The position numbers and the translations under genes are program-made. Source: Amphiscolops sp. MND2022 (Eukaryota). Taken from it: a DNA stretch of 64,000 bases. This document shows, piece by piece, positions 18,731-39,242 of this stretch; the stretch's first letter is position 1; the number at the start of each line of letters is the position of its first letter. The stretch covers positions 41,044,001 through 41,108,000 of the forward strand of contig OZ076419.1 of the NCBI GenBank assembly GCA_964187785.1, written 5' to 3'. The notes beneath the pieces are model-generated. The model was not told the DNA's origin and did not search any database. It saw nothing but the letters and a program-made list of their open reading frames with translations.

Positions 18731-19207
18731 TAAATCCAATAAATGAATTTTATTGCAAAAAATAACTGTATTTCAATTACAATAAGTTATAAATGATTTC
18801 GAAATATAATTACACGAATATGTATAGTAATTTGTCATTGATTTACCTGTAAAGCAGCAACGAAGGATAAAATTTGTACAAAATCGCGACAAGATTTCGT
18901 TACAAAGCTGTCGCTGCAATGAATTCAATAGTCGAGTTGGATCTTCGAGTTCGAAGATCTTTCCGTTTGATGCCAACTTGAGAAAATCTGAATTAAAGTC
19001 AAACATCCAAAGCATCACGTGAGGCCAAACGTACATGCACAGAGGTCTATACAAGGTCAGCGAAAGTCCAAAGTTCATTTATAACTAAGGTCAACTTGAA
19101 ACTGGTTCGGGTCAAAAGCAGCCCAAATTAGAGTTTGAAATGACGACGAGCAGAAGCTGAAAAGTGAAACTGCGATATAGAAAAGATGATAATAGTTTGG
19201 TCGCTTC

Positions 19208-22200
19208 CTATTGGCTAATGAAATGATAGCTTGTGATTGGTTGATTGTCGATGGACGAGTTGTTCGAAATTTTGAATAGCTTGAAGTTTTTGTTGGTTAG
19301 CACTACATCGACTGCTTGAGCCGACGTGAGAGGCGATTTAACTGCTTCGTTCAGCGGGTAGTTCTGATAATACTGCAAAGAATTGCTTTCCGAGTTCATA
19401 GAATCTTCCGAAACTTCTGAAACGTCTGTAAATCCAGGTCGTTCCGCATCTTCTGAACAGTTTGAGAGGTTAAACAGTTTGTTGATTGTTCTTTTTCGAC
19501 CGCTGACCTCAATTTTCTGGCCGCGGTTGAACGATTCCAGAAGAAGATAGTTTGAGCTGGAAAATTCCGACGGGGAGTTATGTAACTGTTTGTTGCGTAA
19601 TGTCTCCACCTCGTTCAACAGACCAGGAATATCGTAAAATTTGCAGTCTTGCACCAACTGGTCGAAGTCTTTGAAGTCTTCAGGTAGTTTTAGACTGTCG
19701 TTTCTGAAACATACGCACGGCTCTGCAAATTTAAATCCAAACTATTGATAAGTATGACTCAAAAGTCTTCAACCCGGAACCGTAAAACACAAAAAGTCAA
19801 ACCTAAACCTTAGTCGTTCTTTAGTTCACTAAAACTGTGAATGAATGATATTCAGCATGGCTTTTTCTAACTGGAAACATCAAAAAAGCAAATTAAGGAC
19901 TTCCCGATCGATTAAAACAAACTCGACCAAAAATTGCACAGTGCCAAAGAAACACCCAAAATGGAACCCTTTGATCTTTTACAGCTTTGCCATTCATGAC
20001 ATTGTAAAAAAATTGGACCCCCAGCTGAAATTAAACTCCGTCTTTTTGCTTGCTTCGGAAACCAACGTTGTGTAACTTTTAGGCCAACCAACTGTAATAT
20101 CGACCGCTCTATGCATTTTCATCGTATTCGCATCTGTCTTTAATTTAATACGTGACTATATTAGTCAGACATTTTCAGTTTTAACTAAAAGCGCTGGCTA
20201 TAAACACAAAGAGTCAAGCTAATTCCTAGATCAAAGCTTTTAATTGGCTCAAAAAATTTACCAGAGATCTTATACCTCCTGACCTATAAAATTTCTTGAC
20301 AACAAAGATCAATTGATGAAGCGTTTAAATTTCATCAATGACGTATATATACACCACTGATAATAGGACTTCTCTGCCTTTTAGAGTGTGGCCTTTTGCA
20401 TGTGCCAGATAGCATGATAGCTATTTGAGAGTTGGTGATAGTTTTTATGATACGTGGACGGGCGCAAGATTGTTCAATTTGCGAAATGTTAATGTATTGG
20501 GCAATTAGTCAGATTTTATCATATTCATGATTTTTTCTGATCAAACCCTATTTGATTGAATTTACTTCTATTGGATTTAATCATTGAATTATTCTCGAAT
20601 TCATGAAGTATTCACGATTGAATTCAACCTCAAGAACCTTCGAATAGCCCCTCAATTTCTTCGAATAGAAGTCGCGTCCGAATATAGGCCGCCCCCGATT
20701 AGAAGCAGTATTAAGCCTGAAAATTTCATCCTAAAAACTAGAGCTTACAGTATTTCTTCGAATATAGGCCGCGAAATCGCTAGGGAAAATTTTACAAGTC
20801 GCGGCCTGTATTCGAAGAAATACGGTAATTGTTTTTTAGTCGGCGCTTCATGAAGTGAAACGCGACTATACTAGTGACTCTTTTTTAATCCACACAAACT
20901 GACCAAAAGAGTTCTACCAAAAATTCTACAAATTTAATGGGACCAAATTGTACTATTTGGCACAGGGAACTGAACAATATTAGCGCAAGATACAAGACCG
21001 GACGAGACTAAGGGGTCCCCCTTCAATTTTTTGATAATTTGCAACAGAATGAATGTTAAAAAATCCCAAAGGGTCCCCCTTTCACATTTTTAGGCACTAT
21101 GAGACTGTTATAAATTCTATTTTTCCTCAACAAATATCCACCGAAAAAAGTTTTTCAATACTATCCAAAGTTTTGACGTTTTCTCCGAAGAAAGTTGCGT
21201 TGTGTGTCAGGACATTTCGTCCTATGCAATTTCAACCTATGCAATTTCAACCGCTGCCAATTCAACCGTTTACAATTTCAACCGCATGCAATTTCATCAG
21301 TTCACACTTTCAACCGTTTGCAATTTCAACCTACGGCAATTTCAACCTATCACACTTCCACCTAATTGCTCTCAAACCGTGCTAATTATGAAAGCCTTTA
21401 TGGTAATTAGTAAAGCTATAAAAAGAGTCCATCAACTAACAATAATCTTTCACACTATGAAATGTGATAATTACTTGCAACGTTTTAGTAGTATAAATAG
21501 CGAAGTAAACTGAATTGTAACTAGTCCACACAACAAGTCCGATAATTTTGAATCTCAAAGCTCAAAATGTTATTTCAAATCATAAAATCAAATAGAGGGG
21601 GCAATATTGCAGTACACAACGGTTACTGTTACAATCAAAAACAAGTCACTTCAAGTTGCATTCATTGGAGATGCACAAAATACTATTCAATTAAATGCCC
21701 TGCCGTTTTGAAGACAAACCAGAACGTGGTCATTAGTTTGAAAGACAGTCACACTCATGAAAGCGACCCTTCCGAGTGTAAAGCGAAAGAAGTTGTTAAC
21801 CAAATTAAACAGAAGTCAGAGTCATTGACACCAACGGTGGCCATAGCAAGTGAAATTTCGGTAATCTCCGACGAATATGCAATCCAGCTTTCATTGCCGA
21901 AAAAAGAAAATTTAATCAGAACAGCTTGCCGCAAGCGACAAAGAGAGAATAGAATTGACGCCCCAACCCCGATTGATCGCCATTTTGACATTCCAGAAGA
22001 ATTCAAAACTTTTCTTCTGAAAGACAGCGGAAAAGATGACAGCGAACGAATTTTGATGTTTGGCGATACAACAATGAAAAATTCGCTTAATTTTTCAAAA
22101 ACATGGCTACTTGATGGAACTTTCAAATTATCACCGGACAATTTTTACCAAATATACACAATCCACATCGAGTTAAAAGGTTTTGCACCCCCTTGTGTTT

Positions 22201-24029
22201 ATTTGCTACTACCCAACAAAACAGAAAAAACATTCCCGAATGCTTGAATTGCTCTGCGAAGAAACAAACGCCAAACCTGATCGCATCCTTGCAGATTTTG
22301 AAAAAGCAGCATTGAACGCATTCAGCAAAAAATTTCCCGATGCGAACCAGTTCGAGGCCGCTGGCGAAGGAGTGGCAAGGACAACTAACAGCGTAGAAGG
22401 ATGGCATTATGGACTTCAAGCTTATTTCACTGGCTCCCAACCAAACGTATGGTTGCTTCTACGGAATTTGGAGAAAGATTCGAAAATGCAGAAATTTGAA
22501 TACCTTCAAGAGACGACTGGAATTGTTTGCTCCAAGCGCCCCCGTTATGAAAAAATCAAAAAACAGATGCAAGTCATACAAAGTGGCTACACTTTCGAGA
22601 ACGTCTTGCCTCATTTGCGAGCAGTCGCCAACTTTAGATGAAAACAATGAACTATTTTGCTGCATTGATTTGTTACTTTTTTGATATGATTCATTTTTGT
22701 GAGTGTGTATTTGAATTTCGCGTTTTGCTCAATTCAATTCTTACAATGGGAATAATTTTTAATCAGTTACAATTAACTGGCACCCGGTTGCGTCCTCCCC
22801 CGGGTACCCAAGTTTGGCGCACTACTCCCCATAACTGCTCTTTGATGTAGCCACATTAGAACCATGCCCGTGAAACCACAAGAGCGTGACAGAAGAATCA
22901 GACCAACCTTTTAAAGGAGTAGCACTTGTCTAAGTTGTTAATTGTAACTGAATGTTTTTTAAAAATGAGGAATTTTAATAGCGTTTAACCGAAAACTTTC
23001 TTATCACAATTGTTCAGTCAGTTCACTTTCACACTTTCAAATAGACGTCATCGATGATAAGTTTTTGATCGCGAATAGCATGTTGTTGAATGCTTTTTCA
23101 AAATGTGTCATACGATTACATCATTCTGTCCTTTTCGTACATTGCAAATTTTAGTGCAACGAAAGTTTCCAATGCGTTCAATATTATGCGTCTTGACAGT
23201 TTGTGTGCTTTTTATTTGCCGCGCGTCGATTATGTTCAATTAGTTTTAGGACGTTCGCAAAGAACGCAACGACCTTGAACTAATTAAAATAGGTTGAAAT
23301 GGCAAGCGGTTGAAATTGCAAGCGGTTGAAATTGCATGCGGTTGAAATTGCGTGCGGTTGAAATTGCAAGCGGTTGAAAGTGTAATAGGTTGAAATGACA
23401 GCGGTTGAAATTGCATAGGTTGAAATTGCATAGGACGAAATGACATGTAATCTCACTAAAGAGGAGGGGTTTGAAAATATTGCGCTATATCCGAAGTTTT
23501 GACATTATATCCGAACTATATTGCGTTTCACTAAGGAGGACGTTCGAAAACAAGCGCACCCATTTGGTGCTTATATTCTAACACTAATTGGGACGAAGCG
23601 GAGGACTTCGCGCAAAAAAATCTACCGCGCCCAGTCCAGCAGTTTGGTCTCCCTTTGGAGTTTTTCGGGTAATGTGGAAGAGAATACTTGACGCTTTGAA
23701 GTCCTTTTGCTATTTTTGAGCCTTAGATATGGCGCCGAATTGGGCCGTTCCCGGCTTGTTCACACTACCTGAGATAATTGAGTACATGTTGAAACACAGA
23801 GGGGTCCCTGTCTATGACGTAACACTGACGGGCGGGGTCCCAGTTTGGTCCATTTTCGCCTGCACCCAGGGTGAGTTTGTGAAGAGTGCTCTCGGGCGCC
23901 TTCATCAGGGTGGCGTTGGCAGTGCAAAAGACGGAGCCCCCCACGTCTATTGAACAGAATGGTGAGGGGGGTAACTGCAAGGGAGAGAACTCGCCCAAGA
24001 TTTCCGACAACAGCTGCTGGTCACCACCA
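19208..24029 (-). CDS. KCTD1/15-like T1-type BTB domain, two exons (24029-23769, 19703-19208)
   Basis: TTGCAG| acceptor, AG|GTAGTG donor (phase 2) and TTTCAG| acceptor join to give SIDVGGSVFCTANATLMKAPEST...YVIDRDPSVFQHVLNYLR|NDSLKLPEDFKDFDQLVQDCKFYDIPGLLNEVE. Stop TAG at 19210-19208. Confidence 0.9.
21210..23445 (+). mobile_element. Mutator-like (MULE) DNA transposon with long repetitive TIRs
   Basis: Left CATTTCGTCCTATGCAATTTCAACCTATGCAATTTCAACCGCTG (21213) is the reverse complement of the right end (to 23442). Both TIRs are arrays of AATTTCAACC. No TSD found. Confidence 0.9.
21567..22641 (+). pseudogene. FLYWCH-MULE transposase, frameshifted and internally deleted
   Basis: FLYWCH (HNGYCY...HWRCTKYYSIKCPA...HTH), then DGTFKLSP...YQIYTIH, frameshift near 22230, ADFEKAALNAF, and RTTNSVEGWH. 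The CxxH and insertion domain expected between KKFPDA and RTTN is missing. Confidence 0.88.
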
Positions 24030-24698
24030 CTGCAAAACAATACATAATTGATTTCAAAATTGATATAATTTATGCATTTCATCAAAATCATGATAAGACT
24101 TCTTGTAGCCTTTATGATGAAACATATTCAATCAAAAACCAGATTTCTTAACTTTAAAATTCTGCTATGGAACTGTTGAAGCAATGGCGGCTATATTATG
24201 GGAATTTTTCGAAACTAGGGAAAAACGCAAGTAACGCCTGAAGGCCAAGGCAAATTCAAGGAAAACCATTGAACATGGAACGCACACCAAGTTTACTCCA
24301 AGATATTGACACTTGTGGCCAATGTTTTTCAATGGATGTCAACTAGAGTTCACAAAAAGACACCACTAAGTAAAGTTTTGACACCACTAATCAGCAATTT
24401 AACGGATTAGCGGCGAAGAATTTTTCAGCGGTTCTCTTAGCGATTACAATTTGCGGCAACTAATAGATGGTCCAAATTCGAAATTTCCTCGGATAAGTAT
24501 AAAAATTCTAGCTTCCTCCTTTTGTGCAAAAATGAATTACATCATCGTTTAAATTTCAACCATTCTTGAATTCAAACATTTATTAATTTGAAGAAAATTT
24601 TCAGCGAAACAGCAATTTTGAAGTTTGCGGTTTAGCAATTAAAAATTAGTGATGTGAAAACTCTGAGGCAAATTGACCTTTCCATAAATGGCAATGAC

Positions 24699-27191
24699 CT
24701 GTTATGGATGTTGTTTGAGGGGTCGCTATGGTCCCTGTTCGGAGCACCAGCAACCGATGCTGTTGACCTGTGGTCCATGACGTCACTACAATTGGTGTCA
24801 CTGCTGCAGCCCCCTAGAGAAGGAGAGTCGCTGCGCCCTCGGCTGTTGACACCCACTGCTGGGCCGCCCAGCGACTGGTGCGGGGAGACGTGGGTGCCAC
24901 TCGACAGTTGGTTCGAGTTGGGCGCGATCGGCTAAAAACACAGACTATATGGGTTCGGCACTTTAAAGAAGCTCTGCGTATATGGCATTTCTGAAACCAA
25001 ATTTCTTAAAGAAGCAATAAGGCAATACACTGTTTTAAAACAAAAACTGATAATTATTTAATTGGAGTGAGGAACTTGAAGTTAGTGGGAGAAAAGATTC
25101 AGCAATCTCATATAGCCTTTGATTGGGGCGCTTTTGTCTGGTAACCGTGAAGTCATCAAATTGGATGTCATCACGTGTGTGTGCTTGTTTTGGGTTAAAA
25201 AATTCGGAAAAGAGTTCTAGCATACCTTATACTGGCTTTTGATTTTGTTGATTGTGAACTGTTTCAACTGCTGTTTGTACTGGTTAAGAACTCTGGCTAT
25301 AGCCATATACTCTCTGCTTCCGGCGTACATCTTGTTTAAACTGCCTCTGGGCCTCCCTCTGGCTTTGGGTCCCCCAACACCCCCCAACCCCCCTCCAAAG
25401 GAACCCCCCGACCCCACCAGACGGGGACCAGGAAGGATGGCGGGGTAGCTCCTCAGGTGCTGCAGCGAGTTCAACTGACTTCCAGCCACGCCACCCAAAG
25501 TGACACCCCTTTTGTTGTTGTCATCGTGAGTAGACAGGTTGGGAGTCACCATGGTGGGGAGACATGAATCCGAGTCAGTCCTCGCTCCTGCAAAATCGTT
25601 TCGAAATAAAAACGGTTTTTCTCCCACATTTTTCTCGATTTGATTTTTCCTACTTTTATAAATTCTAGATCAGAGTCAGTTTTTTCCTACTTTTATAAAT
25701 TCTAGATCAGAGTCAGTTATTGTTTTTGGGTATTATTGGTTATTTGGTAATATGATTAGCCTAATAACATTCCAGGCGCTTGAATTATTGGGAATGTTCT
25801 GGAATTCCATCAATACCTGCCAGTTCCATTGCATGTTGTTTTCTCCATCCGGGAGGTCTGCCCCTCCGCTTGTATACTGCGTTGCTATTGGTGAATTTGT
25901 TCATGGTGTTCACTGAAATATATTACTAATTAGATAATTAATCTATTACTTAAATAATTAATGAAAAATTGTGGCATTGGTTACTCACACAATTGCAGCT
26001 AGTTTTGTTGCATTCAAATTGTTGCAAAATGTCATCGATTTTATGTTTGAGAGAATGAACTAAAATCCGTATAAAACTCAACCGGCATTGGTGATTGCTG
26101 AGCGTTTATTTTTGAAGCGTTGCATTTGACACTAAAAGTCTTGCATTTATAAACCTAATGAAAGTTTTCATGGTAAAGCTCAAATGAAATTGGAAACAAT
26201 TCGACCCTAAAAATATGTTACCTGAGACCTTAACACAACTGACTTTTAAGCCTTACATATCTGATCTTTGATCTTAACAAAACTGAACTTTAACCTTAAC
26301 AAAATTGACCTTTGACCTTAACACAACTGACCTTTGACCTTAACAAAACTGGCCTTTGACCTTAACACAACTGACCTGCGCTGCCATTGTTTGAAAATGA
26401 GTCATTGTGGTGGGTGGGGTTATCACTGTTATTGACAGGTATCTGTTGGACAACAGTGGCCGTATTAGCCCCAAATTCTCCCACACAATTGAAGCCCCCT
26501 TCGCCCTCTGTGCCCTCGCCCCCCACCAACTTCATGTAGGACTCCACCGTCTCCTGACACTGAGAGGTCAGGTCAACTGGCAGGTCACCGCCCGAGTCCA
26601 TCTCACACGAATCGAACTCACTCTCGTCTATCTCCAATCCACATTCGCCCTGGAAAACAATTTCACACAGTCAATCATTCAATTTCATCCAGTGGGACTG
26701 TTATTGACACTGTAGGGAAGCTCTGCAGCTTGTGCGGTCCTATTATTCATGTTTGAAAAGAAAAAGAAGGCAAAGAAGTAGAGTTTTGTCAATTTCATCC
26801 ATTCAAAACACACCTGTCAAACAAACAAACAAGCTGCAAAGTTGCTTCAAAAAAGTGTGCATTTTTTAATGAAATGACCAAATGAATTTTTTCGGTTTGA
26901 TTCAACTTGATTCCATTGGGTTGAGGTTGGATATTTAGAAACCAATTGTGCAGATACAGTTCAGACATAGCCCAGTATCCGGAACAGAAAACCCGGTTGT
27001 CTTACTCCTCTAGATGCGATGTCATCAAGCTTGTCCCTGAGGTGATCTGGGTACAAATTATTGATGCCCCCCTCGGAGACGGAAAAAGAGTCATCGGCGT
27101 TTGTACCCGTGACCCCAGTTGCCTCTTTGACCCCATTGATGCCCCCGTTGACACTGTTGGGGGTCAGAGCTCCTCCACTCAGAACCTCGCT
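24699..27191 (-). CDS. Four low-complexity exons with an AT-hook upstream of the BTB exons (27191-27006, 26649-26376, 25587-25226, 24931-24699)
   Basis: All junctions are GT-AG and phase-compatible (0, 1, 0, 2). The third exon encodes GPKARGRPRGS (~25369-25340). An alternative donor at 24678 has the same phase. Confidence 0.75.
25644..25718. repeat. Direct tandem duplication, about 37 bp x2
   Basis: TTTTTCCTACTTTTATAAATTCTAGATCAGAGTCAGT occurs twice back to back. Confidence 0.9.
26222..26378. repeat. Minisatellite, about 21-22 bp unit
   Basis: About six copies of CCTTAACA(C/A)AACTGACCTTTGA variants. Confidence 0.85.
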
Positions 27192-27280
27192 CTGCAACAT
27201 ACATGCAACATTGATGCAACATATATGCAACATGGATGCAACATTCATGTTAGACATAAGTTGAAGACATAAGTTGAAGG
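27192..27280. repeat. Short tandem repeats (ATGCAACAT; CATAAGTTGAAG x2)
   Basis: Five TGCAACAT copies at about 11-12 bp spacing next to the acceptor at 27192. Confidence 0.8.
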
Positions 27281-28575
27281 AAGACCAGAGTAACATTAAA
27301 ACTGATCAGAGGTGCAGTGGCACTCGGATATTTTCAGAACAAAATAGCACCCAAATGTAAAAAAAATAAATACAGTTTACGATGGAATACAATGCTCAAA
27401 GGCAATGTGAGGTGTTCCTGTGGCTGGAAATACATATTAGACCAAAACTATAAGTTTGACGTCTTGAAAAGTTCAGAAAACATCCAATTCTAAACAATAT
27501 TGGCGAAAAATGATGTAGGATTTAAATATAGAGGTTGCATCAAACCTACTGATGGAAACAAATTCATATTACTGATTGTGTGACTGGGCCGTTCATTTTT
27601 GCTAAGTTTGCAAAACAAAAAAAATAAAGTTTTAGGAACTTTTTAAATTTTATTACCCAGTAACTCAGAAACTACTGGTCAGAGGAAAACTCAAAAATTT
27701 TACAGCCTCGACACTGTTCTTCAGTTTTTCCTAGACGCATTTTCTGAAAATGTTTTGGTTAAAAATGAACTGGCAAAAATTGTTTTAACAAATTCAAAAG
27801 TGAAATTGTCTTCAACTTTTTGGTACTCTACAGTATTTGCATTCTTTTCCATAGTTTCTTCCCAGATGAAACTTGGAGATTAGTTGTTACGGTGTTAACC
27901 GTGTTCCGGATTTTATTCGGTTGAAATGAGCATTTTTAATTATTCTACTGTTCGGTACTGTTGATAAACATTTGTTAACCTACCAAAAAACTTTGTTCCC
28001 ATATGAGATCGATCATTATATAAAATAGCTCGTGAGAAAACATCAGTACTGCAAATGTCTCATTCCGCAGAACATACTAGCTTAGCTTCATAAAGACAGT
28101 CATCCTGTTTTTGAACAGCAATCTTATGGTGTTTTGAATAATGTGGCAGAGATCGTCTGAGATCTTGTTTACTAACAACCTGCTAAAAACCAAGTTGAGA
28201 GACACTCAATCAGTCTGTTTAAAGCATTTTTTACTGCCGTACGCGATCGATTACAACTATTTAATCTGTTCCTTTTAACGATGCTGTTAAAATTCAATAC
28301 ACCCAAGACCAAAAGTCACTTCCATAGTTGTAGAAAAAAGGCTCTCTTGAATGATTGCTTCAAGTCGAAAAACTTTCCACGAAATTCTTGCAAGCGAATG
28401 TAACGTTGCAAGCTTCAAACTGCACTGTTCTTTCAAGCTCTCAAAATTTCCAATATTTGTCAACAGATGTTTCAAATTAACTTTGAAGACTGCGATTTTC
28501 ATGATGGCAAATTAAGAATTTGACAATAAAAATTGGATCTTGTATTTCAGCAGCGTGGTGAGAAAGAATGCCCAC

Positions 28576-31500
28576 CATTTCCGGAAGTAGCTGATTGACC
28601 AAAACAGTGGCTCGTATAGAGTATCCGGTCCAGAGTTTGTTTTTATCCCAGCCCGCTTTCTCTGCTATGTTTTTCATGAAGTGCGCCAGATTGTTTTTCC
28701 CGATGGGCACTTTGGAAAACCACCTTCCGTTCTGAAAGTTGGCTCTTTTTTGTCACACCAACTCCACGCAAAAGTTTTTCGAACTATCATTAGTTTTGAA
28801 AAAAAAAAACAGAAACCCACAGATGTTCATCAAACGGATCTTGCTCCAGCTTCAGAATTATGGGAAATTGTCAGAAAATAGGATCAAAAGGTTTATCATC
28901 ATAAGAAATTTTCAAACATTAGACATGAGAATAATCCCTCAGCTGTGGTCTTTCCCTGTTAAATTTGCAAATTTGCCAAATTCCAATTCTATCCAAGAAA
29001 TCCAGGAGTTTCTTCCACACAATTCAACGACAAAAAATTAGACTACTTTTGGAGATATATTAATGGAAATATATTTATGGAGATATGATTTTTTTTCAAA
29101 AAATTGTCTGGAATGCAACAACTCCAAAATAACCACTACTGGTTCTTTGCCAAATGTGTTCTTTCAACAACAATTTTAAGATTTGTTATTGGAAAAAGAC
29201 CCTGTTGTGAAAAAAAGTGTCAACTTTTGAAAAATAACTTTGACTCTGGAAAACAAAAACGAGCCTGCATGTCCGTGCAAGGTCTGCAGTAGAAAGATTG
29301 GGCGCCAGGTGGAATTTTGGACATGTACAGCTTAATCAGACGCATAGGACAATTTGGGAGACCATTTGGGTGAATTTCACCCCTTTTCTGCAGAGAATAG
29401 TACCCCTTCAGCAGTTCATAGTTTTCGCGACGCTTCTCCACGTATTCAATCACTTCATTCGGAGGCATCCCTGGATAGTTGTTTTTACTTCCCTTCTAAG
29501 TTTGGAACTTCTCCCGCAAAAATTTTCAAAAATTTGGGTAAACAATTTTAGTAAAACTCTTGCAAAATGCTTCAATCTATTACTAAATGTTTCAGTTTCG
29601 AGGTCTAAATGATTCCAAAAAAGATGAGAAATCACATACCAGAGCCGCATGTGCGGTAAAAAAAAGTCGGAAACGAATTAAAATATTGAAAAACAAATTA
29701 CGTACTTCATTGTCATTTGGTCATTTTTGGACTAATTCTGGCTATGTTTCTCAGATGCCAGTCATACGATTTTGACGTCATTGAGCACACAGGAGCAACT
29801 TTGGGTGTAGAATGACTGTGCAAAATTTTATAAAAATAGTATGGACAGTTTGAGAAATTTGAAACTTTCATTGAAAGTTCGGGAGAAAAAAGGTACGAGT
29901 GCATAAGTAGTCAAAAATTTTTTCCGACTCACAAAAAGTCTAAAATCATATGATCTTTTTTATTGGTAATACTATAAACATGACATAGGGGAAGCAAGAA
30001 AGGCGTCCCTCGAATTTGTATCTGACTGGCAGCTCCCCACCGGAGACTTCGATGTTCGTCCCTAGATCTGAGGGCAAAATGTTTGGCCAGCAAAAAGTAG
30101 ACAGTGTGAATCAGAGTGGACGGGTTCGAATCCCCGAGGATGCCTTTTTTAGTCATGTTACTTTCCTCATTTAGTGCTTCAGCTTTCAGAAGTTTCAAAA
30201 AGACCCCAAGTAAATAATGCAATTTGACATTTTGAAGCCAAACCATTTTCGATGGTAGATAAGTTTGCTGAAAAATTGAATATACGCAGCTTGTTTTAAA
30301 CGTTTTTGATGTAGTCGAAATTCAGTTTGAAATCATTTGAATCTTCATGGAAAAGTTTCATTCGTGGGCGTTTAGGGTGTGAAAAACAGTCCAGACAGAT
30401 ACCGAAGGATTTCTTGATGAACTTTGAACCTGTCTTCAAAAAAAACAGCAGAGTTTTTGAAACCAGAGCCGCATATGCGGTAAAGGAGTCGGCTTAAGTC
30501 TTTTTCCTTCTGACTCGCTTTCGTTCGAATCGTATGAACAGTTTGTGAGAAAATCGAAAAAATCGAAAAATGACTGTTTTTTGGCCATTTTTGGGCTAAA
30601 TTTGGCTATGTTTCTCACATCCCAGCCATACGATTTTGATGCCATTGCACATATAGGACTCTAATATGGTGTAGCATAACTGTAGAAAATTTCGTTTGAA
30701 TCGTATGGACAGTTTTTGAGAAAAGCGAAAAAAGTCGAAAAATGGCCGTTTTTTGGCCATTTTTGGGCTAATTTTGGCTATGTTTCTCACATCCCAGCCA
30801 TACGATTTTGATGCCATTGCACATATAGGACTTTAATATGGTGTAGAATAACTGTAGAAAATTTCGTTCGAATCGTATGGACAGTTTTTGAGAAAATCGA
30901 AAAAAGTCGAAAAATGGCTGTTTTTTGGCCAATTTTGCGCTAATTTTGGTATGTTTCTCACATCCCAGCCATACGATTTTGATGCCTTTGCACACGCAGG
31001 GGCCCCTTTGGGTGTAGAATGACTGTGCAAAATTTCGTGAAAATCGTATGGACAGTTTTTGAGAAATTTGAAATTTTTATGAAAAGGTCGGGAGAAAAAG
31101 AAAAAAAAACAGCACGATTGCATAAGTAGTCGAAAATTTTTTCCGACTCCTAAAAAAGTATTCGTTGCTTATTTCATCAATTTTTTAATAGAAACTATTG
31201 TCACAGCTTAAGTTTTGTACCAAATGTCAGAATAAATTTGCAGTGCCGTTCGTTCGAAGTTTGTTATTTTTTTCATTTCCTTACATCAGTGCGAAATTGT
31301 TTTGTTTCCTCATTTTCCGTGCAATTAAGCAACATAGCTGCCATTCCTTTAAGGTAGAGCTCTTGTTCCATCTCTGGAGTTATCACTTCGGCATGTCTTT
31401 TCCCTGGCACGGGTGTACAATGAGTTATCTCTAGAGCCAGACTGTCGAGATATTCCAGTGTTCTGGCAAACTCTGGCTTTAGCATGTTGAAGTCTAACTC

Positions 31501-34500
31501 CATGCTAATCAAGCATCGTGTTTACAACAATCAAGTAAGTAATTAAGTATACAATCGTGTAATAAAAGAGTGGACCTTAATTTGATTTCAATATTTTGAA
31601 CACTTATTATATTTCCGGTGGTTATAAAGGTTTCGTTAAAATTTGTTTTCTAGTTTACATTGGCGCTTCTTTGAAGTTTTTGTGATAAACATTAATGAAG
31701 ATAGCGAATAATACCTCTATGAATCATGATTTCGACAGTTTGTAATTTAAAAAGATGACACCTCAAAAAGATTTCCAATTCGATTCCTTTTAATCTTCAT
31801 TTTCATCAGTGTCTGATGATTACAAAGTCAAACTTCACAATCATTAGTGCTCAAACATCCAGGGAAAACCGACATTCCTACCAAAATAATTTGCGTACAA
31901 GCAATAAAATTCGGAAATGGAACTGACTCTACGGAATAACTACTTTTCTTATTCTCAAGAAACTAAAAATTTGTTTAGCACAGGAATTTCCCGTGCTAAA
32001 TTCTTCCCAAGTTTTTGCGAATAATACTAGATGCTGATGGAATGCTAGGAAATACTTTCCACTTGGCATGAGGCGGGTTTCTCTGCCTGATGACGGGTGT
32101 TGAAAAGCAGGAGGACACAGGTTTGAATACCGCACTAAACTGAAAATTTTTGTTAGGCTAAGAGTGACCAAAGCGCCTCCTTTTAATTTTAAGCCACGGC
32201 ACTGTGACTTTTTGTGAACTTTTTTCAAAAGTAATCTTAGCTACTTTAGCAACATAACTTTCAGCAAGTACAAAGCATTTTTCGAGCCCAGCGGCCTCAG
32301 TGTTTGGCACAGAGCGACTTTCCGATGAAAATTATTTTCGCTAGTGTGAGATTTATGAGAGTCCTCTCAACGATCGTTCTTGAGCAAAATCTACGGATTT
32401 CTGTTACAAAATACAACTTCAAAATGCTCTATTTTCGGAATGTTAACATCATTCCCGAATTATATCGGATCTTGCGAGGACGAAGACAAAACAAATACGT
32501 TTTCTTGGATTTGCTTTTTCGGAACTCCTCTTTCATAAATGTATGAACTAGTAGGTTTCAGAAGAGTTGAGATTTTTTAGATCACGAAAAACCGATACTT
32601 TTTGTCAAAAAAATGACGATGGAAGATGTCAGATTTTTTTCAAGAAGTGTCCCAGCAAAATATATATGGCATATACATTCCCTGTTGTATTCGAAGTTTA
32701 CGTATGACAATAGAAGACAATTGAAAATATAAACTGAATCTGTTTTTAGTGTGCGCTTTTTGAGAAAAAAGTGCCCCATTTTCACAGAACTAAGTTTTTT
32801 GTCAGCATGGACTGGATGGTCCACTTTATTGTTCAAATTTGTTCAACTTCGTCAGTGATTTGATGTGGCCGTGAAGCAACTCTACAATGTATCTAGGGCC
32901 AAATTAAGTAGCAAAGGGCCACACTTTGAGGGTTTTCGACGCTATACGACCTTTTTTTGAATAGGTTTTTCGATGTTTTTAGTTACAAAAAAGTCTTTAC
33001 GAGTTCAAAAGCCGCCTTTCCAACTTTGACACTCTAAAATATACAAATATTTCATGAAAGCCATCTTGAGGATAATATTGATACTTTGAGATGGTTGAGG
33101 CTTGAGCGGAGCGCCGATTTTACACGTTCTCGTCTTGATTGATAGATTATAGAATAAACTAATCACCAGAAAGTAGTATAGACTGTGGAATGAGTTTAGT
33201 CTCTAGAGCTTACTGTTCTGACTTATAATGATTGACCATAAACTTCATTGCCATATCTACATATAGTATTTTTTTTTGCTTTCTTGGGTCATGCAGTAAA
33301 TGAAAGATACAAGTTTTACTTGCTTGAGAACCAGCTTCATGGAGAAGCCGCGGCTTTTGGTTGGTTATAGGTCTCAATAACCGCAGATACATCACCATCA
33401 AAGTGCGAATATTATTCAAGAGGCTCTGAGTCGATGGTTCAAACAACTCTAACAAGTTTAACCCTAATTGACCTGGGCGTTTTTGCAAATTTTCAAAAAT
33501 TCTGATTAGAAATTTTAATTCAATATCTCCACAACTACGCGTACCAGAGAAACGAACTATAGCACGTTTGAAAGATCTGGTATTGGGCTTTCATTTTGGC
33601 CAGGTGAGCCCCTGTCGCCGCGCGCCCTATTCTTTTTTTTTCGTGTTTTTTAGTTTAGTTTCTTTTTCCGGTATTACTGCTTCGCGTGGGGCTTGTAGTA
33701 ACAACAGGATATCATTGGGGTTTGCTGCACAAGGACTTGTTGTGGAAGGGTATGTGGTTGGTTTTTTCTATTGATCAAAGACTTGGGGAAACTGGATTTC
33801 GTCAAAAACTGAGTTTTGGGAAAGTGTAACCATTTTCTGTGCAAAAAAAAACATTTTTCTCGGATTTGAAGACATATTCACTTTTTCTAATGCTTGTGCC
33901 ACTCAAATCAATCTATGTATCAATGAACTTTTGAAAAAAAAACTGTGCTAGAGAGTATGGGCTGCTGGCAAAAGGAATCAGAAATTGAAAAAAGGTATGC
34001 TGCTTTAAAGTACCACTAGGTTAATTAGGGTTAAGTAATCTTTAAGTTGCAAATCCTATTTTTTTGAGGAAGATGGCTTTAAAATTTTAATGACTAGCTT
34101 GTGCTCCTAATTTAGGTTCTGAAAATATTTATTCAAGGTAATGCAGGTACGAATCACTGCAGGCAGGTACAATTTCAATGCAGCATGAACAATTTTGATT
34201 TCAACTTCACTTCGGTATGCAAGGAAATGAACCGAACTGTTTAAAATATGAGGAGTCCGTTGTAAACATGATGCCTTTTTATCATCATCTGCATCACATT
34301 GTAGAAGTAATGCAATTGTCTAACAGGGTAAGGTCTTCCGTCCTTTTTACATACACATTCCCATTTCCCCTCCAATTGTTAGAAAAACACTGAAGCAAAT
34401 TTCTGTCTCCTTTTCACTTTCTACAAATCAAAAACCCCTCAAAGCATTCACATTCCGACAAAACGTCTCCCAAAAATGCACTTTTTAAAACGCTATCATT

Positions 34501-36608
34501 GAAATTTACTCAAGGAAATGAACTTTCAAAATTTTCATCATCATTTCAACTTTCAAAAAGACGTTGAAATTTTTACATCGCCATGTAATCCAGTTGATTA
34601 GAATATGATAAATAATATGACTTCCTCCGGGTGTAACCTCTAGTGGAATCTGCTGGGAAGTTTTTCATGCTGCTTCCATGCACACTTTTCCTCACTAACG
34701 TTTCCTTACAAAACATGGAAATTTCTGAACACCCGCGTTTAAAGAAAACTTTGCAGGATTACAATGCAGCTTCCACTATTTAAATTAAAGCCGAGGACCA
34801 TGTTTCTTATTCCCATGTACTCCTTGTTTTGCATCCCCCAACACAAAAAACTTCTATTTTGAAAAAGGCTTTTACGAAAAATTTTAAATGGTTAACAATT
34901 TTTAATGGTTATAACAAGACATAGTATAATTTTCCAGCAAAAAAGGGCCCTGATTTTTCATATTATTGTCCAAAGTAGCAAAAATTCACACCTGGAACAA
35001 GCCGAAGTTGTATAGAAAGGTCCTTACCACACATTTTCCCCGCAAAAAAACGAAATTGGCAACTTTTAAATGCTCATCAATGTGAAAGATAGGATTATGT
35101 CAAATATTATTGCATAGGATTAAAATTCCATATAACTATGTCGACATAGTGGTATTTGAACCTTGTTTATTATTCCCCCGCTTGTAAAATATTTCCCTCT
35201 TTTTCAACGCTGTCAATCACTTTTTTCACACTTCATTTTGTTCAATAATTAACTTGAGTATTCACTGTTATTCAAATTGCACGCTGAATATGGCGCTACT
35301 TTGAAATCAATAAAGCGACTGAAGTTGATTTGCATTAAATTGGCGGTAAAATTGATAAAGTCTCAGCTGCATTTAAAAATAGATTTGATGCATAAAAAAA
35401 CTTCGATGCGCGGATTTGCTGCCAAATTTAGGATGTATCGTCTAAGCAGCTTGATAAAATTCAATTGAAACTGTGAAATTTTAATACATGGAAGTTGCCG
35501 CGATAGTTCTGTAAAATCATGATAAATTAGCTTGGCAACCTACGAAAACTTGTGAAAAGTTCGAACAGTTTCAATTAGGGACGTCATATTTTCGAGCCGA
35601 TCTATGTTTTTGTCATAGCTGTTTCACACTGTATTATCATTTCAGGAGTGATGATTAGTGGGGAAAGAGAAAATTTAGTGATTTTGCTCCCTTTTTGCGG
35701 ACTTCTGAGAAGAACAGGGGCAAAAAGTGATCTATATCGGGAGTGAACTTTGAGAACAGAGTTTTCAGTTCGCACACAGGGAGGCCTGGGTCTGCTTTCT
35801 GTCTGTTGCGGAGCCACCTACAATAATCTTTACCCCTAACCGTCCTTCCATCCCTTCCTCAACTGGCCCTCAAACCATGAAAACTGGAAATATTTTTTAA
35901 AAAGCAGCCTATATCTCATAAATGGGAAAAATTATTTCCCAGCTGCGTTTTTTTTCACAAACTAGGTGTACTCTTATTTTCAGTCAAAACGAAGTGTTTT
36001 TTAAACAGAATTCAAAGATGAAAAACATTTGCTTCGCAGAATTTCAGCTTGTGAAGGTTTTTGAAATTAACTTTTCTCGAAAAAGCACATCAAGTTTGAA
36101 CTTTTTGAGCAAGTTTTGAACCATTTGTTGAACTTTTTCATATAACAAAATTATTGATTCTGCGTTTTCACTTGTGTTGCTAGATTCACGAAGGAACATA
36201 TCCCGGTTGCGCGTGTCTCGTTAGAATTAAAAAAAAAACAAGATGATTTCTTTTCAAACTTGAATTATTTTTAGCAGTAAAAATCATTTTTCAATAGAAA
36301 ACTAACGAGAATCAATGTTTTTAATCTTTAAAATGTCAACTAGTGAACAATCAATTTTCCACGCACATCACGTTTTAAGGTGAATGTTCCAATTTTCACT
36401 GTAAAAATCATTGTTTAAAATCTTTTCGCTATATTTACGCTCAAAAAATCGTTGGGATTTTCATTTTTATTTTAGAGTATAAAAAAGCTATCCACGATGG
36501 TTGGTTAGGGATAAAAGATTGTACCTGATCCAGATTTTTTCAAGCGAATCTATGGCCCTTCTGGAGTTATCGCTCAATGGAGAGGAGAAGGTGTCACAAT
36601 TGTTGTAA
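28576..36608 (-). CDS. DUF3504 (Crypton tyrosine-recombinase-derived) domain, seven exons: 36608-36525, 35817-35691, 34342-34275, 31504-31347, 30143-30009, 29470-29265, 28731-28576
   Basis: The joined translation is continuous and family-typical: SDNSRRAIDSLEKIWIR|WLRNR...DHFLPLFFSEVRKK|DGRPYPVRQL...MQMMIKS|MELDFNMLKPEF...ITPEMEQELYLKG|ILGDSNPSTLIHTVYFLLAKHFALRSRDEHRSL...IQIRG|MPPNE...NCPMRLIKLYMSKIP...FYCRP...Q|NGRWFSKVPIGKNNL..FMKNIAEKAG...WTGYSIRAT. All phases agree. The start of the first exon is uncertain (36608-36659). Confidence 0.85.
29640..29930 (-). mobile_element. HINE-like family B, monomer (another monomer at 43090-43390)
   Basis: Inverted pair AGTCGGAAA (29665) / TTTCCGACT (29921). 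Hairpin CCGC-ATGT-GCGG (29645-29656) lies outside the 3' inverted repeat. Confidence 0.65.
30464..31149 (-). mobile_element. HINE-like family B copy with internal 172-bp tandem expansion
   Basis: Same ends as the monomer (CCGCATATGCGG...GAGTCGG at 30469-30492; TTCCGACTC at 31141-31149). Internal unit anchors at 30601, 30773 and 30945. Confidence 0.75.
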
Positions 36609-38429
36609 CTGGGAGACAAAACAGCATCAGTCATTTCGCACTCATTCATCTTTTCAGGCTTCCCAGATTATTAACAGCTTAAATTGCGTAACAGCTAGGA
36701 ACAATTTCTATCAATAATTCGAAAAATTCCTTAAAATTCAACTAATTTTCGTGATTCTATGTAAGTTAGATAAATAAGTGTAACTTTCGTTTACTCGCCA
36801 AAAAACTTCCATGTTTTCCATTTCTTTTAAAAGTGAGAATTGCCTCGATTTGTTGGGGGAAAGGGGTTGATATAAAGCTTCGGAAGTGACGTCATAGGGG
36901 CTTTAATAGAGGCGACCAGAAGTACTTCAAAGCGTCAAGCAATCTCTTTTGAAAAAAATTCTCAATCTCATGTAGCCAAAAAAAAACAGAAAGGGGACCC
37001 TTTGTGCCTAAAAAGGCTTTTTTCTTGCCAGATATGTAAAACGCCAAAGCTTTCTTCCTGTTTTATAATCCAAGACAGCCAGGAACCAGAGCGCGAAGCT
37101 TTTGTCAAATAAAATTTTTCGCAAAAACGTCGCAAAGTGTCGAAAAAACCCTTTGGTCCTAAAAACGCTTTTTCTACCCGAAAATATCAAAAAAACAAAA
37201 GCGGAGACTCTTTTAGAATACCGAAACGTTTCAGCAAAAAGGTCCCACAGTTCCGAAAATAACACTCAAAGTCCAAAACCGTTCGCCAAAATTGAATGGG
37301 TAGACCACAAAAAATTTACTATTTTTGTGGGAATTTTATGGTCACTTCGGCCGGAAAACCCGACGGAAAGTCACTATAGAAGTCGTGTATCATTTCATAA
37401 ACCGCCCAACTAAAAATCATCAGCATTGAAACTCGAACAAAAAAGGGCAATATGTAAATTGGATTGGTTCCAAAAAGTCATGTTTCGCATAAAAAGAGTT
37501 TTAAAAACACTTCAATTCCTAATCTTGGCATAAATATAAAAAGACGTTAAGAGAGTGTAATAAACTCGTATTGAAGTGAAATAATTAATATGAAAGGATG
37601 AAAAAGATACAGGGGGTTTAAAGAGAGCAAAGAGGACGCATTTTACAATTTATTGGATCATCATGAACATTTAAAATCTACCCAGGGTACGGGTCTGTGA
37701 TTGGTAACATCTGGATTTTGACGAAATTTTTGCAAAAAATGCAGTTTGATTCGTGTTTTATGGTAACAATGGTGTTTGCTGTTTTTACTTTTTATTGAAG
37801 GGGCTAATTCGTTGTATAAGACAGTTCTTTCTGAAAAGAACACTTACCCAACATGATGATTGGGGTTGAAGATTCAGGTAAAAATTTTTAGTTCTTTCTT
37901 CTTGCGATAGTAGTAGGTGTTTAATTATTGCCAATTAAATAGAAGAAACAGAGTTGCGTCATTTCTATGAGAAAAATTTGATTCAGATTTGCCCGATATA
38001 CTTAGTCATTTTACAAAAATATCATTTATTGATTTTATTAATTCTAATTCTTGAATTTCAATTATAAAATTTCAACAACCTACCTTTTTTGAGAAAAAAA
38101 AAACAAAAAACCCTAGCAGCGGTCAAACTCGGTGTTTCAAGCAGGAAAGAAAATTTGATAATCTGGGAGTTTTTTCTGTCTCACTTTCTTCTGTCAATAA
38201 GTGTTTCACAAAGTTTGCACGATGTTGATAAGAATTGAATGTGGAAAAGAGCTAGCTAATCATGAAAACTTCGTGACAATGAACAAAAAGTCAGTTGTAT
38301 GCATTTGTTAATGACTTCTAGTTTCGGTTTTTCAATTACACAAACCAATGGTCCGATATTTCACACCGTAATTGAAAACCACGTTTCCACTCAATGATTG
38401 ATTTTTTATGAAGTTTTCCACTAATACTG

Positions 38430-38667
38430 AACAAGACGCCCGCGGACCAGCGGGATATTTTCCGCCCCAAATCATTTGAGCAACAAAAACGTTTTAAGTC
38501 CAAAAATCCTTACAAATACATATCGCATGGAACTAAATTTATGTCAGTTGAATTCTGTGAATGTACTTCTTCATATTACGTAAACAATAATTCTTGGCAA
38601 ATTTTGTAAAAAAAACCCGTTTGATTTAAATATTTTCCTTTCCCATATGAAATATGGGCGGAAAATA
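38430..38667 (-). mobile_element. HINE-like family C element (~238 bp)
   Basis: 12-bp inverted repeat TATTTTCCGCCC (38456-38467) / GGGCGGAAAATA (38656-38667). On the minus strand the 3' copy is followed by hairpin CCCGC-TGGTCC-GCGGG and CGTCTTGTT. Confidence 0.55.
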
Positions 38668-39242
38668 ATAAGTTATCTAAAATTAAGTAATCTCATTAGG
38701 AGTTGAATTTAGCTGAAAGAAAAATGAATAAATAATCTGTTTTGCTAAATTGTGTCCCGATTCACTATTTTTGGGCTGTATAACCTAACAGATATTAATT
38801 ATCGGTTAAAAATATTGCATGATGTGTGTAATTTGGTCTTAATTGTAAAAATATGAATAATTTTCCTTGAACAAACACGCCTGATAGTCAAGGATATTTT
38901 TTCTACAAAAAGGAAAAGATTTTGCGAATGTTACCTCCATTTTGAACCTTTCATGAGTATTATTTTAAAAATTCTTTCCAGCCTTCCAAAAGTTGCCATT
39001 TGTTGCCAGAAATAATATTTAATTGGAATAATTTCAAATATCGAGAAACAAAACAAAAAATCAATTATTTCAACTTGAAATGCATCATAGTTTTTGGCCG
39101 ACAGATGTAACCATAATCTTGAGAATATTGAAACCTTTTTCAAAAGAGCTGAGGCCCGCGAAATGTGTTAACTTTTCATCTTCGCAGGACAAAATAACTA
39201 CTCGATAGTGATGATCTTTCAAACATTTTGTTAATAACTCAC

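What the first reader, a model, noticed from the sequence alone, without database searches (positions are those of the whole stretch)
19208..36608. Crypton-derived DUF3504 domain apparently fused to an AT-hook and a KCTD1/15-like BTB domain in an invertebrate-type genome
Seen: seven exons rebuild a DUF3504 domain on the same strand as, and about 1.4 kb upstream of, the exon chain ending in a BTB domain. Donor ATG|GTGGGC (28575, phase 0) fits acceptor TTGCAG|AGC (27192, phase 0), giving one open frame. Known (from memory): DUF3504 genes such as ZMYM2-4/WOC, QRICH1, KIAA1958 and the long KCTD1 isoform are domesticated Cryptons, and DUF3504+BTB is the vertebrate long-KCTD1 architecture. The BTB here resembles KCTD1/15 (IDVGG...PES...YVIDRD...LPEDFKDF). 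Inference: either the fusion is older than vertebrates, or it arose twice. The DUF3504 motifs (LGDSNP..L..TVYF....FALR...EHR.L) look to me more ZMYM/QRICH1-like, which would favour convergence.
Basis: partly seen in the sequence, partly recalled or inferred. Interest (0 to 1): 0.88.

Follow-up and report, generated by a model that had tools for sequence, protein, structure and literature searches.

The report
Crypton-derived gene beside KCTD gene
A tamed transposon gene (DUF3504, Crypton-derived) lies just upstream of, and probably inside the transcription unit of, a divergent KCTD1/15-type gene with AT-hooks in a marine invertebrate. The arrangement echoes the origin of the long vertebrate KCTD1 isoform, but nothing shows that the two are spliced into one protein, and a related species lacks the arrangement.

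Summary
On the minus strand, seven exons (36649-28477) rebuild a DUF3504 protein. It is colinear, with no gaps at the exon joins, with intronless 368-370 aa homologs. Seven further exons (27191-19208) encode two AT-hooks, a KCTD-type BTB domain and a KCTD1/15-like tail. The proposed GT-AG join (28576 to 27191) exists and gives an open 960 aa frame.

The fusion is not shown. No RNA data exist for this organism. Without the join, the DUF3504 frame ends 33 codons later and gives 357 aa, the normal size of this stand-alone family. In a related species the KCTD ortholog has no DUF3504 within 10 kb upstream, and its DUF3504 homologs sit at other loci. Any fusion is therefore lineage-specific, not older than vertebrates.

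Three points keep a fusion plausible. Conservation with the relative begins exactly at the proposed acceptor. Exon 8 has no Met. A short conserved 5' element lies 140 nt before that exon in the relative, but 1.8 kb upstream of the DUF3504 start codon here, which puts the DUF3504 gene inside the KCTD 5' region.

My odds are 0.55 for separate products, 0.4 for a fused isoform and under 0.03 for an ancestral fusion. An earlier first-reader note of this scan on this same stretch of DNA (s1-193562: five non-GT donors) is confirmed here by homology.

The parts
38430..38467 (-). Conserved GC-rich 5' element, GGGCGGAAAATAT.CCG..GGT..CGGGC.GTCTT. It is a putative promoter or 5'UTR piece of the KCTD-like gene. 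It lies 1.8 kb upstream of the DUF3504 ATG.
   Evidence: blastn against the relative's L007 9990-10027: 82% over 39 nt, E=0.09 for the whole search space. The local alignment score of 39 beats all 300 shuffles. The 13-mer occurs once in the window. In the relative it holds the ATG, 147 nt before the exon-8 homolog.
36525..36649 (-). DUF3504 gene exon 1. ATG at 36649; donor CAG|GTACAA, phase 2.
   Evidence: Family HMM positions 5-27.
35691..35817 (-). DUF3504 gene exon 2 (N-terminal SAM/QRICH1-like part). Non-GT donor AAAAAG|GG.
   Evidence: HMM 21-70, E=4e-10. The join is colinear with P0003.
34275..34342 (-). DUF3504 gene exon 3. Non-GT donor AAAAAG|GC.
   Evidence: HMM 64-92, E=6e-7..
31347..31504 (-). 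DUF3504 gene exon 4. Non-GT donor AAAG|GA.
   Evidence: HMM 91-145, E=7e-9. Three synonymous SNPs.
30009..30143 (-). DUF3504 gene exon 5 (GILGDSNP...ALRSRDEHRSL). Non-GT donor CGAG|GG.
   Evidence: Pfam DUF3504 E=1.9e-8. HMM 137-191, E=3e-24. Two synonymous SNPs.
29265..29470 (-). DUF3504 gene exon 6. Non-GT donor CAG|GC.
   Evidence: Pfam E=6e-4. HMM 189-263, E=2e-24. phmmer hits P0002 and P0003 at 52-55% identity.
28477..28731 (-). DUF3504 gene exon 7. Family homology ends at 28591. If that donor is not used, the frame runs on to TAA at 28479-28477, giving 357 aa.
   Evidence: HMM 255-305, E=7e-20..
27192..28476 (-). Spacer, or the proposed fusion intron. It holds AATAAA motifs near 27915 and 27650, an ATGTTGCAT x5 microsatellite just before the acceptor, and an ORF open from 27305 with an ATG at 27296.
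   Evidence: No conservation with the relative upstream of 27199.
27006..27191 (-). KCTD-like gene exon 8 (SEVLSGGALTPNSVNG...). It has no Met. Donor GGA|GTAAGA.
   Evidence: Ortholog in the relative. DNA conservation starts at 27199.
26376..26649 (-). KCTD-like gene exon 9 (acidic region, LEIDESEF...).
   Evidence: 75% identity to the relative.
25817..25912 (-). KCTD-like gene exon 10, with AT-hook 1 (KRRGRPPGWRK).
25226..25587 (-). KCTD-like gene exon 11, with AT-hook 2 (KARGRPRG) and the conserved helix SREYMAIARVLNQYKQQLKQFTINKIKSQYK.
   Evidence: 59% identity overall and 97% over the last 32 aa to the relative.
24699..24931 (-). KCTD-like gene exon 12 (Ser/Gly-rich linker).
   Evidence: It is contiguous with exon 13 in the relative.
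23769..24029 (-). KCTD-like gene exon 13, N-terminal half of the BTB_2 domain.
   Evidence: Pfam BTB_2 E=1e-12. KCTD1 is the best PDB hit, E=5e-7.
19208..19703 (-). KCTD-like gene exon 14: C-terminal half of the BTB, a KCTD1/15-like tail, and the stop at 19210-19208.
   Evidence: A profile built with the relative hits only KCTD1 and KCTD15 below E=1e-4 in the PDB (E=1.4e-5 and 6e-5). It is 70% identical to P0018.
18746..18888 (-). Conserved end of the KCTD-like 3'UTR, running up to the poly(A) signal.
   Evidence: 86-88% DNA identity to the relative.
21567..22641 (+). FLYWCH/MULE transposase ORFs inside the last KCTD intron. They are not part of the gene.
   Evidence: Pfam FLYWCH E=7e-11, MULE weak.

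Best explanation
Two real coding units under purifying selection lie head to tail on the minus strand.

(1) A domesticated Crypton-type tyrosine-recombinase gene. It has an N-terminal SAM/QRICH1-like part and a DUF3504 domain, and it has lost the catalytic His and the Tyr region. It is split by six introns, five with non-GT donors. Read on its own it gives a complete 357 aa protein, like its 368-370 aa stand-alone homologs.

(2) A divergent KCTD1/15-type gene. Its long N-terminal extension carries two AT-hooks, so it is presumably a DNA-tethered BTB oligomer.

The DUF3504 gene entered, or was kept only in this lineage in, the 5' region of the KCTD gene. It sits between a conserved 5' element and the first conserved coding exon. 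I take separate proteins as the default output. On that reading the DUF3504 mRNA ends after the TAA at 28477, and the KCTD mRNA starts either at the in-exon ATG at 27296 or at a small upstream exon that skips the DUF3504 exons. A fused isoform through 28576 to 27191 remains possible.

Shown: both gene models, selection on both, the absence of this arrangement in the relative, and the non-GT donors. Inferred: the transcript ends and the role of the 5' element.
For: DUF3504 gene:
- The seven exons are colinear with intronless homologs and have no gaps at the joins.
- The stand-alone frame of 357 aa matches the family size. The nearest Atlas clusters are 350-380 aa.
- The family C-terminal tails are not conserved, so the short tail here is not abnormal.
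- SNPs in the DUF3504 exons are 6 synonymous to 1 non-synonymous.

KCTD gene:
- SNPs are 8 synonymous to 3 non-synonymous.
- The relative's ortholog has exons 8-10 as one 214 aa ORF starting with ATG. There is no DUF3504 in the 10 kb upstream or in the 21 kb intron.
- The relative's two DUF3504 homologs are intronless and lie on other contigs without a BTB neighbour.
- In both species the frame upstream of the exon-8 acceptor is open and holds ATGs.

The proposed join:
- The donor ATG|GTGGGC is a weaker match than the seven GT donors that homology or frame supports at this locus.
Against: - Conservation with the relative, at both protein and DNA level, begins exactly at the proposed acceptor: TTGCAG|AGC here against TTTCAG|AGT in the relative.
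- Exon 8 has no Met but is clearly coding, with many synonymous differences.
- The stretch upstream of the acceptor is not conserved, is hydrophobic and Cys-rich, and is partly microsatellite. It looks like an intron.
- The conserved 5' element lies upstream of the DUF3504 gene. Its ATG in the relative is ATC here. KCTD transcripts may therefore have to pass through the DUF3504 exons.
- A DUF3504 gene directly upstream of, and on the same strand as, a KCTD1/15-type gene is unlikely to arise by chance.
- No RNA data could be obtained either way.
Confidence: 0.55

Rival explanations
1. Lineage-specific fusion, convergent with vertebrate KCTD1 isoform b. Transcription starts near the conserved element at about 38450. 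DUF3504 exons 1-7 are included, exon 7 uses the donor after 28576, and it splices in phase 0 to exon 8. The product is a 960 aa protein with an inactive recombinase-like DUF3504 domain, two AT-hooks and a KCTD1/15-type BTB. A DUF3504-only form could arise by polyadenylation after the TAA.
For: - The joined frame is open for 960 aa.
- Conservation starts exactly at the acceptor, and exon 8 has no Met.
- The acceptor GTATGTTGCAG|A resembles the exon-14 acceptor GTATGTTTCAG|A.
- The conserved 5' element lies upstream of the DUF3504 gene, and its ATG is lost here.
- The donor sits 15 nt after the end of family homology.
- Vertebrates provide a precedent (PMC3212892).
Against: - There is no transcript evidence.
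- The donor is mediocre, and 2 of the 4 nearby GTs are in phase 0 anyway.
- The stand-alone frame has the normal family length.
- The relative lacks the arrangement.
- The 5' element match is marginal over the whole search space (E=0.09).
- A third in-frame option exists that skips the DUF3504 gene: ATG 38475 plus 16 codons, then TCA|GTATTA.
Confidence: 0.4
2. Ancestral fusion: the DUF3504 + KCTD1/15 architecture predates vertebrates, and this locus is the ortholog of vertebrate KCTD1b.
For: Only the shared domain order and the KCTD1/15-like BTB and tail.
Against: - A related species with the orthologous KCTD gene has only 147 nt between the 5' element and exon 8, and no DUF3504.
- The DUF3504 here groups with local intronless paralogs at about 45% identity and with Crypton-type recombinases.
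- No vertebrate DUF3504 protein reached E<=1e-3.
- The vertebrate domain lies in one exon and is dated after the KCTD1/15 split (PMC3212892).
Confidence: 0.02
3. Decayed transposon: the DUF3504 pieces are the wreck of a Crypton copy broken by insertions, not a gene.
For: Introns 4 and 5 are full of very high-copy repeats. Several introns carry short direct repeats at both ends (AAAAAG|G; AG|GGAYGCCT). The catalytic residues are lost.
Against: - 357 codons stay open across seven pieces.
- Every join is exact against the homologs.
- All intron ends are AG|G...AG.
- SNPs are 6 synonymous to 1 non-synonymous.
- Conservative substitution patterns are seen against the homologs.
Confidence: 0.03

Closest known systems
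Vertebrate KCTD1 isoform b (long KCTD1; Kojima & Jurka 2011, PMC3212892)
   Same: A Crypton-derived DUF3504 unit lies upstream of, and on the same strand as, a KCTD1/15-type BTB gene. The recombinase catalytic site is degenerate. An in-frame splice into the KCTD exons is possible.
   Different: - The DUF3504 here is split into seven exons; in vertebrates it is in one.
- The fusion is not shown here.
- The arrangement is absent in a related species, so it is not inherited from a common ancestor with vertebrates.
- The KCTD part here has a roughly 400 aa extension with two AT-hooks.
- The C-terminal domain falls below the Pfam KCTD1-15_CTD cut-off.
Animal Crypton tyrosine recombinases and stand-alone DUF3504 proteins of 350-380 aa (molluscs, cnidarians)
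   Same: Same domain order (N-terminal SAM/QRICH1-like part, then DUF3504/recombinase), same size, and 36-46% identity to P0002, P0003 and P0013.
   Different: Six introns where the homologs are intronless. His becomes Tyr in the H-x-x-R box, and there is no recognisable GH...Y region. P0013 and P0011 keep theirs.
KCTD1 / KCTD15 (AP-2 repressors, pentameric BTB)
   Same: The BTB_2 domain, the LPEDFKDF motif and the start of the C-terminal domain align only to KCTD1 and KCTD15 among solved structures.
   Different: It is very divergent: about 38% identity in the BTB N-terminal half, with KCTD5 scoring almost as well on that half. It has a long N-terminal AT-hook extension that I do not know from KCTD1/15 (not searched beyond one relative).

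Membership tests
DUF3504 (PF12012), Crypton-derived | Match to the Pfam DUF3504 model above its gathering score | tested here: met
   Exon 5 alone scores 34.9 bits against the 29.7-bit cut-off, E=1.9e-8. Exon 6 adds 20.3 bits. The joined protein could not be submitted as one sequence.
DUF3504 (PF12012), Crypton-derived | Colinear with Crypton-type tyrosine recombinases, including the N-terminal SAM/QRICH1-like part | tested here: met
   Alignment with P0002, P0003, P0008 and P0013. A homolog-only HMM covers positions 5-305 of 382 in exon order. The homologs carry Pfam QRICH1 + DUF3504, with or without Phage_integrase.
DUF3504 (PF12012), Crypton-derived | Catalytic tetrad R-H-R-Y incomplete (domesticated, not an active recombinase) | tested here: met
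   GYSIR stands in place of GHSLR. No homolog of the GH...Y box was found in exon 7 or downstream.
KCTD1/KCTD15 subfamily | T1-type BTB domain (Pfam BTB_2) | tested here: met
   E=9.6e-13 on exon 13.
KCTD1/KCTD15 subfamily | KCTD1-15 C-terminal domain (PF20871) | tested here: inconclusive
   The window exon 14 gives no hit. The relative's P0018 gives E=0.021, 15.4 bits, below the 27-bit cut-off but spanning profile positions 10-95 of 97. The AlphaFold model was too poor to use, mean pLDDT 37.
KCTD1/KCTD15 subfamily | Closest solved relatives are KCTD1 and KCTD15 rather than other KCTDs | tested here: met
   The exon-14 profile hits KCTD1 at E=1.4e-5 and KCTD15 at 6e-5. The next natural family is at 0.12. 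On exon 13, KCTD1 is best (4.7e-7), with KCTD5 close behind (8.9e-7).
Long KCTD1 architecture (DUF3504 and BTB in one polypeptide) | Both domains on one mRNA and in one reading frame | not testable with these tools
   An in-frame GT-AG join exists. No RNA run holds this locus: X1, X3 and X6 are DNA, and X5 has nothing on the exons.
Long KCTD1 architecture (DUF3504 and BTB in one polypeptide) | Arrangement shared by descent (present at the orthologous locus of relatives) | tested here: not met
   In the relative's contig ctg87990 there is no DUF3504 in the 10 kb upstream of the exon-8 homolog or in its introns.
AT-hook | R-G-R-P core flanked by basic residues, and conserved | tested here: met
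   KRRGRPPGWRK and PKARGRPRGS. Both cores are identical in the relative. The Pfam AT_hook model was not scanned for on its own.

The most novel reading that the evidence does not exclude
A second, independent capture of a Crypton-derived DUF3504 domain by a KCTD1/15-type gene, here in a marine invertebrate. It would give a 960 aa protein with DUF3504, two AT-hooks and a BTB, made through newly gained introns, five of which have non-GT donors. That would be convergent with vertebrate KCTD1b, and it would suggest that DUF3504 and the KCTD1/15 BTB have a functional affinity.
Probability: 0.38. Interest if true: 0.78.

Novelty: new member of a known kind. Interest (0 to 1): 0.5.

Why it matters
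The function of DUF3504 is unknown. The only known case where it is joined to a BTB domain is the long KCTD1 isoform of jawed vertebrates, explained by one Crypton insertion upstream of KCTD1.

Here a different Crypton-derived gene, under purifying selection, sits in the 5' region of the KCTD1/15-type gene of a distant animal, and it does not do so in that animal's relative. If the two are spliced together, the same domain pair arose twice. That would argue strongly that the pairing is functional, and it would offer a second system in which to study it.

If they are not spliced together, the locus is still a clean example of a recently domesticated recombinase gene that gained six introns. It is also a warning that same-strand adjacency with an in-frame GT-AG is not evidence of fusion.

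Tried and rejected
- RNA evidence. Two run searches gave only DNA-like runs of the organism and one seawater metatranscriptome. Laying them on 25700-31600 gave no exon coverage and no splice joints.
- JGI metagenome scans. I searched for relatives of the N-terminal exon and for the spliced exon-8/exon-9 junction. Neither found anything.
- The search for homologous proteins. The relative's BTB exon gave no hits. The ORF in the high-depth stretch gave only itself. The repeat at 28261-28654 therefore could not be delimited. A self-blast of the window found no second copy.
- AlphaFold on exon 14 with a two-row alignment gave mean pLDDT 37, so no fold search was made.
- I first read the tail after the proposed donor (VGILSHH...IF) as a remnant of the recombinase GH...Y box. 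I dropped this, because the homolog-only HMM stops at 28591.
- The all-canonical GT-AG alternative for intron 4 (donor GAT|GTAAGG, acceptor TTTCAG|CAA) was rejected. It inserts about 50 residues that no homolog has.
- Synteny between the window and the relative's two DUF3504 loci: none.
- A conserved upstream coding exon for the KCTD gene: none was found in 37 kb of the window against 10 kb of the relative.
- CpG profile: uninformative.
- A phylogeny with vertebrate KCTD1b, ZMYM, QRICH1 and KIAA1958 could not be run, because none of those sequences was returned by a tool.

Full report
WHAT IS THERE

All features lie on the minus strand.

The stop-to-stop frames and the DNA give two exon chains.

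Chain 1 has seven exons: 36649-36525, 35817-35691, 34342-34275, 31504-31347, 30143-30009, 29470-29265 and 28731-28477.

Pfam DUF3504 hits exon 5 at E=1.9e-8, above the family cut-off on that exon alone. It hits exon 6 at 6e-4.

A phmmer search of 1.84 billion representative proteins with exon 6 gave only 13 hits. The best were two 370 aa proteins, P0002 and P0003, at 52-55% identity. They carry Pfam QRICH1 + DUF3504. More distant hits, P0013 and P0011, also match Phage_integrase and keep the GHSLR...GHRS...Y boxes.

The spliced window protein aligns with these intronless proteins from the first Met onward, with no gap at any exon join. An HMM built only from the homologs hits the seven exon ORFs in order, covering HMM positions 5-305 of 382. 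Homology ends at 28591.

The seven-exon reconstruction is therefore right.

It needs non-GT donors at introns 2-6 (GG, GC, GA, GG, GC, each after an exonic AG). An earlier first-reader note of this scan on this same stretch (s1-193562) had listed these. Homology now confirms them.

The only all-canonical alternative, at intron 4, would insert about 50 residues that no homolog has.

Chain 2 also has seven exons: 27191-27006, 26649-26376, 25912-25817, 25587-25226, 24931-24699, 24029-23769 and 19703-19208.

It uses only GT-AG introns. It encodes an acidic region, two AT-hooks (KRRGRPPG and KARGRPRG), a conserved helix, a BTB_2 domain (E=1e-12) and a tail.

ARE THEY FUNCTIONAL GENES?

Three DNA runs of the organism and a second assembly of the same species (L008, 99.7% identical) give polymorphisms.
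- In the DUF3504 exons, 6 are synonymous and 1 is not.
- In the KCTD chain, 8 are synonymous and 3 are not.

Both chains are therefore under purifying selection in the frames given. The reading as a dead transposon is unlikely.

The recombinase site is degenerate: GYSIR stands for GHSLR, and there is no GH...Y box. This is the DUF3504 condition.

WHICH KCTD?

On exon 13, KCTD1 is the best solved relative (4.7e-7), with KCTD5 close behind (8.9e-7).

A two-sequence profile of exon 14 hits only KCTD1 and KCTD15 (1.4e-5 and 6e-5). The alignment runs into the first strands of their C-terminal domain.

Pfam KCTD1-15_CTD is the top, full-length but sub-threshold, hit on the relative's exon (E=0.021).

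I accept 'divergent KCTD1/15 type'.

THE RELATIVE

The exon-14 search found one relative, P0018, at 70% identity, in ENA assembly ERZ26859043. I walked its contig upstream.

The ortholog there is built as follows:
- Exons 8, 9 and 10 form one 214 aa ORF that starts with ATG.
- Exon 11 is separate.
- Exons 12 and 13 form one exon.
- Exon 14 is separate.
- A Polinton-like element sits in the 21 kb intron after exon 10.

Neither tblastn nor the family HMM finds any DUF3504 in the 10 kb upstream of its first coding exon or in its introns.

The relative's two closest DUF3504 genes, P0002 and P0003, are intronless. They lie on other contigs with no BTB neighbour. With the window protein they form an unresolved trio at about 45% identity.

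A truncated paralog in the window's own species (L009) lacks introns 2-4 and has a GT intron at another position.

The DUF3504 gene next to KCTD is therefore specific to this lineage.

The vertebrate domain lies in a single exon and is dated after the KCTD1/15 split (PMC3212892). The one Atlas cluster met here that carries DUF3504 + BTB_2 + KCTD1-15_CTD is all Chordata.

Together these rule out, for practical purposes, a fusion older than vertebrates.

IS THERE A FUSION HERE?

The donor ATG|GTGGGC (exon ends at 28576) and the acceptor TTGCAG|AGC (exon starts at 27191) exist. The joined frame is open for 960 aa.

Against the fusion:
- Without the splice, the frame ends 33 codons later and gives 357 aa. 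That is the size of this stand-alone family: 368-370 aa homologs, and Atlas clusters of 350-380 aa.
- The family tails are not conserved in any case.
- The donor is weaker than the seven supported GT donors at this locus.
- 2 of the 4 GTs in that tail are in phase 0, so an in-frame GT is only weak evidence.
- The frame upstream of the acceptor is open, with ATGs, in both species.

For the fusion:
- Protein and DNA conservation with the relative begin exactly at the acceptor.
- Exon 8 has no Met but shows many synonymous differences, so it is coding.
- The stretch before the acceptor is not conserved, is hydrophobic and Cys-rich, and here is partly an ATGTTGCAT microsatellite. Exon 8 therefore looks like an internal exon.
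- The only conserved non-coding block upstream is a GC-rich element. In the relative it holds the ATG, 147 nt before the exon-8 homolog. In the window it lies at 38467-38430, 1.8 kb upstream of the DUF3504 ATG, and its ATG reads ATC. This match is marginal over the whole search space (E=0.09). It does, however, fall at the one place in the relative that matters.
- The 3'UTR end of this gene is also strongly conserved (86-88%), so conserved UTR pieces are plausible here.

If the element marks the KCTD 5' end, the DUF3504 gene lies inside the KCTD transcription unit, in the sense orientation. KCTD transcripts must then include or skip its exons.

A skipping model is also in frame: ATG 38475, 16 codons, then TCA|GTATTA.

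No RNA could be brought to bear. The runs that hold the locus cover the introns evenly and are DNA. The one metatranscriptome has nothing on the exons. The JGI scans found nothing.

VERDICT

The anatomy is confirmed. The fusion is open. My odds are 0.55 for separate products, 0.4 for a fused isoform (alone or alongside separate forms), and the remainder for other readings.

What is secure is this: a domesticated Crypton-derived gene, with five homology-confirmed non-GT introns, sits in the 5' region of a KCTD1/15-type AT-hook gene in one lineage only.

That is an independent replay of the first step that Kojima and Jurka proposed for vertebrate KCTD1b. One RT-PCR would show whether the second step, splicing into one protein, has also happened.

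Noticed in passing
window 35690-29264 (minus strand introns 2-6 of the DUF3504 gene): Five consecutive introns have non-GT donors (GG, GC, GA, GG, GC), each after an exonic AG. They are confirmed by gap-free colinearity with intronless homologs. All six introns of the neighbouring KCTD gene are GT-AG. The second base of the intron-5 donor (30007) is polymorphic, GG or GA, in three DNA runs. Several introns carry short direct repeats at both ends (AAAAAG|G; AG|GGAYGCCT), as expected for recent intron gain at AG|G sites.
   Followed up: partly
L006 5230-20199 (relative, contig ctg87990): A Polinton/Maverick-like element of about 15 kb fills the intron between the exon-10 and exon-11 homologs of the relative's KCTD gene. 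It has a double-jelly-roll capsid gene, a protein-primed DNA polymerase B, an rve integrase and a dense one-strand ORF array. The same intron is 229 nt in the window.
   Followed up: no
window 27006/26649, 26376/25912, 24699/24029 compared with L006 2689-3333 and L004 6531-7190: The window's KCTD gene has three introns that the relative lacks: there, exons 8-10 and exons 12-13 are each one exon. Taken with the six introns of the DUF3504 gene, either the window's lineage gained many introns or the relative lost them.
   Followed up: partly
window 30428-31215 and 29640-30033: Introns 4 and 5 of the DUF3504 gene hold an extremely abundant repeat. Summed word depth reaches about 1e6 against a baseline of about 55. 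It forms tandem units of about 170 nt and has GAGTCGGAAAAA-type ends.
   Followed up: no
window 28261-28654: Word depth is 80-120 times the baseline in three DNA runs, across the tail of exon 7 and the start of the spacer. No second copy exists in the window and no related ORF exists in the protein collection. The limits and nature of this repeat are unknown. If it reaches 28590, the proposed donor and the TAA both lie inside a repeat.
   Followed up: partly
window 18746-18888: The last 143 nt of the KCTD-like 3'UTR, up to the poly(A) signal, are 86-88% identical to the relative. That is more conserved than most of the coding sequence. There is no Rfam match above noise.
   Followed up: partly
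window 38656-38668 (+): A second copy of the GGGCGGAAAATA motif, with one mismatch, lies in inverted orientation 190 nt from the conserved 5' element. It is E2F-site-like and may mark a bidirectional promoter.
   Followed up: no
window 21567-22641 (+) and 13907-16923 (-): FLYWCH/MULE transposase ORFs lie in the last KCTD intron. An LTR-retrotransposon pol (protease, RT, RNase H, integrase) lies downstream of the gene.
   Followed up: no
L009 9404-10327 (same species, assembly ERZ25074608): A truncated DUF3504 paralog with about 50% identity. It is contiguous across the positions of introns 2-4, has one GT-AG intron at a different position (ATAG|GTGTTT ... CAAAAG|GT), and has no exon-7 homolog.
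   Followed up: partly
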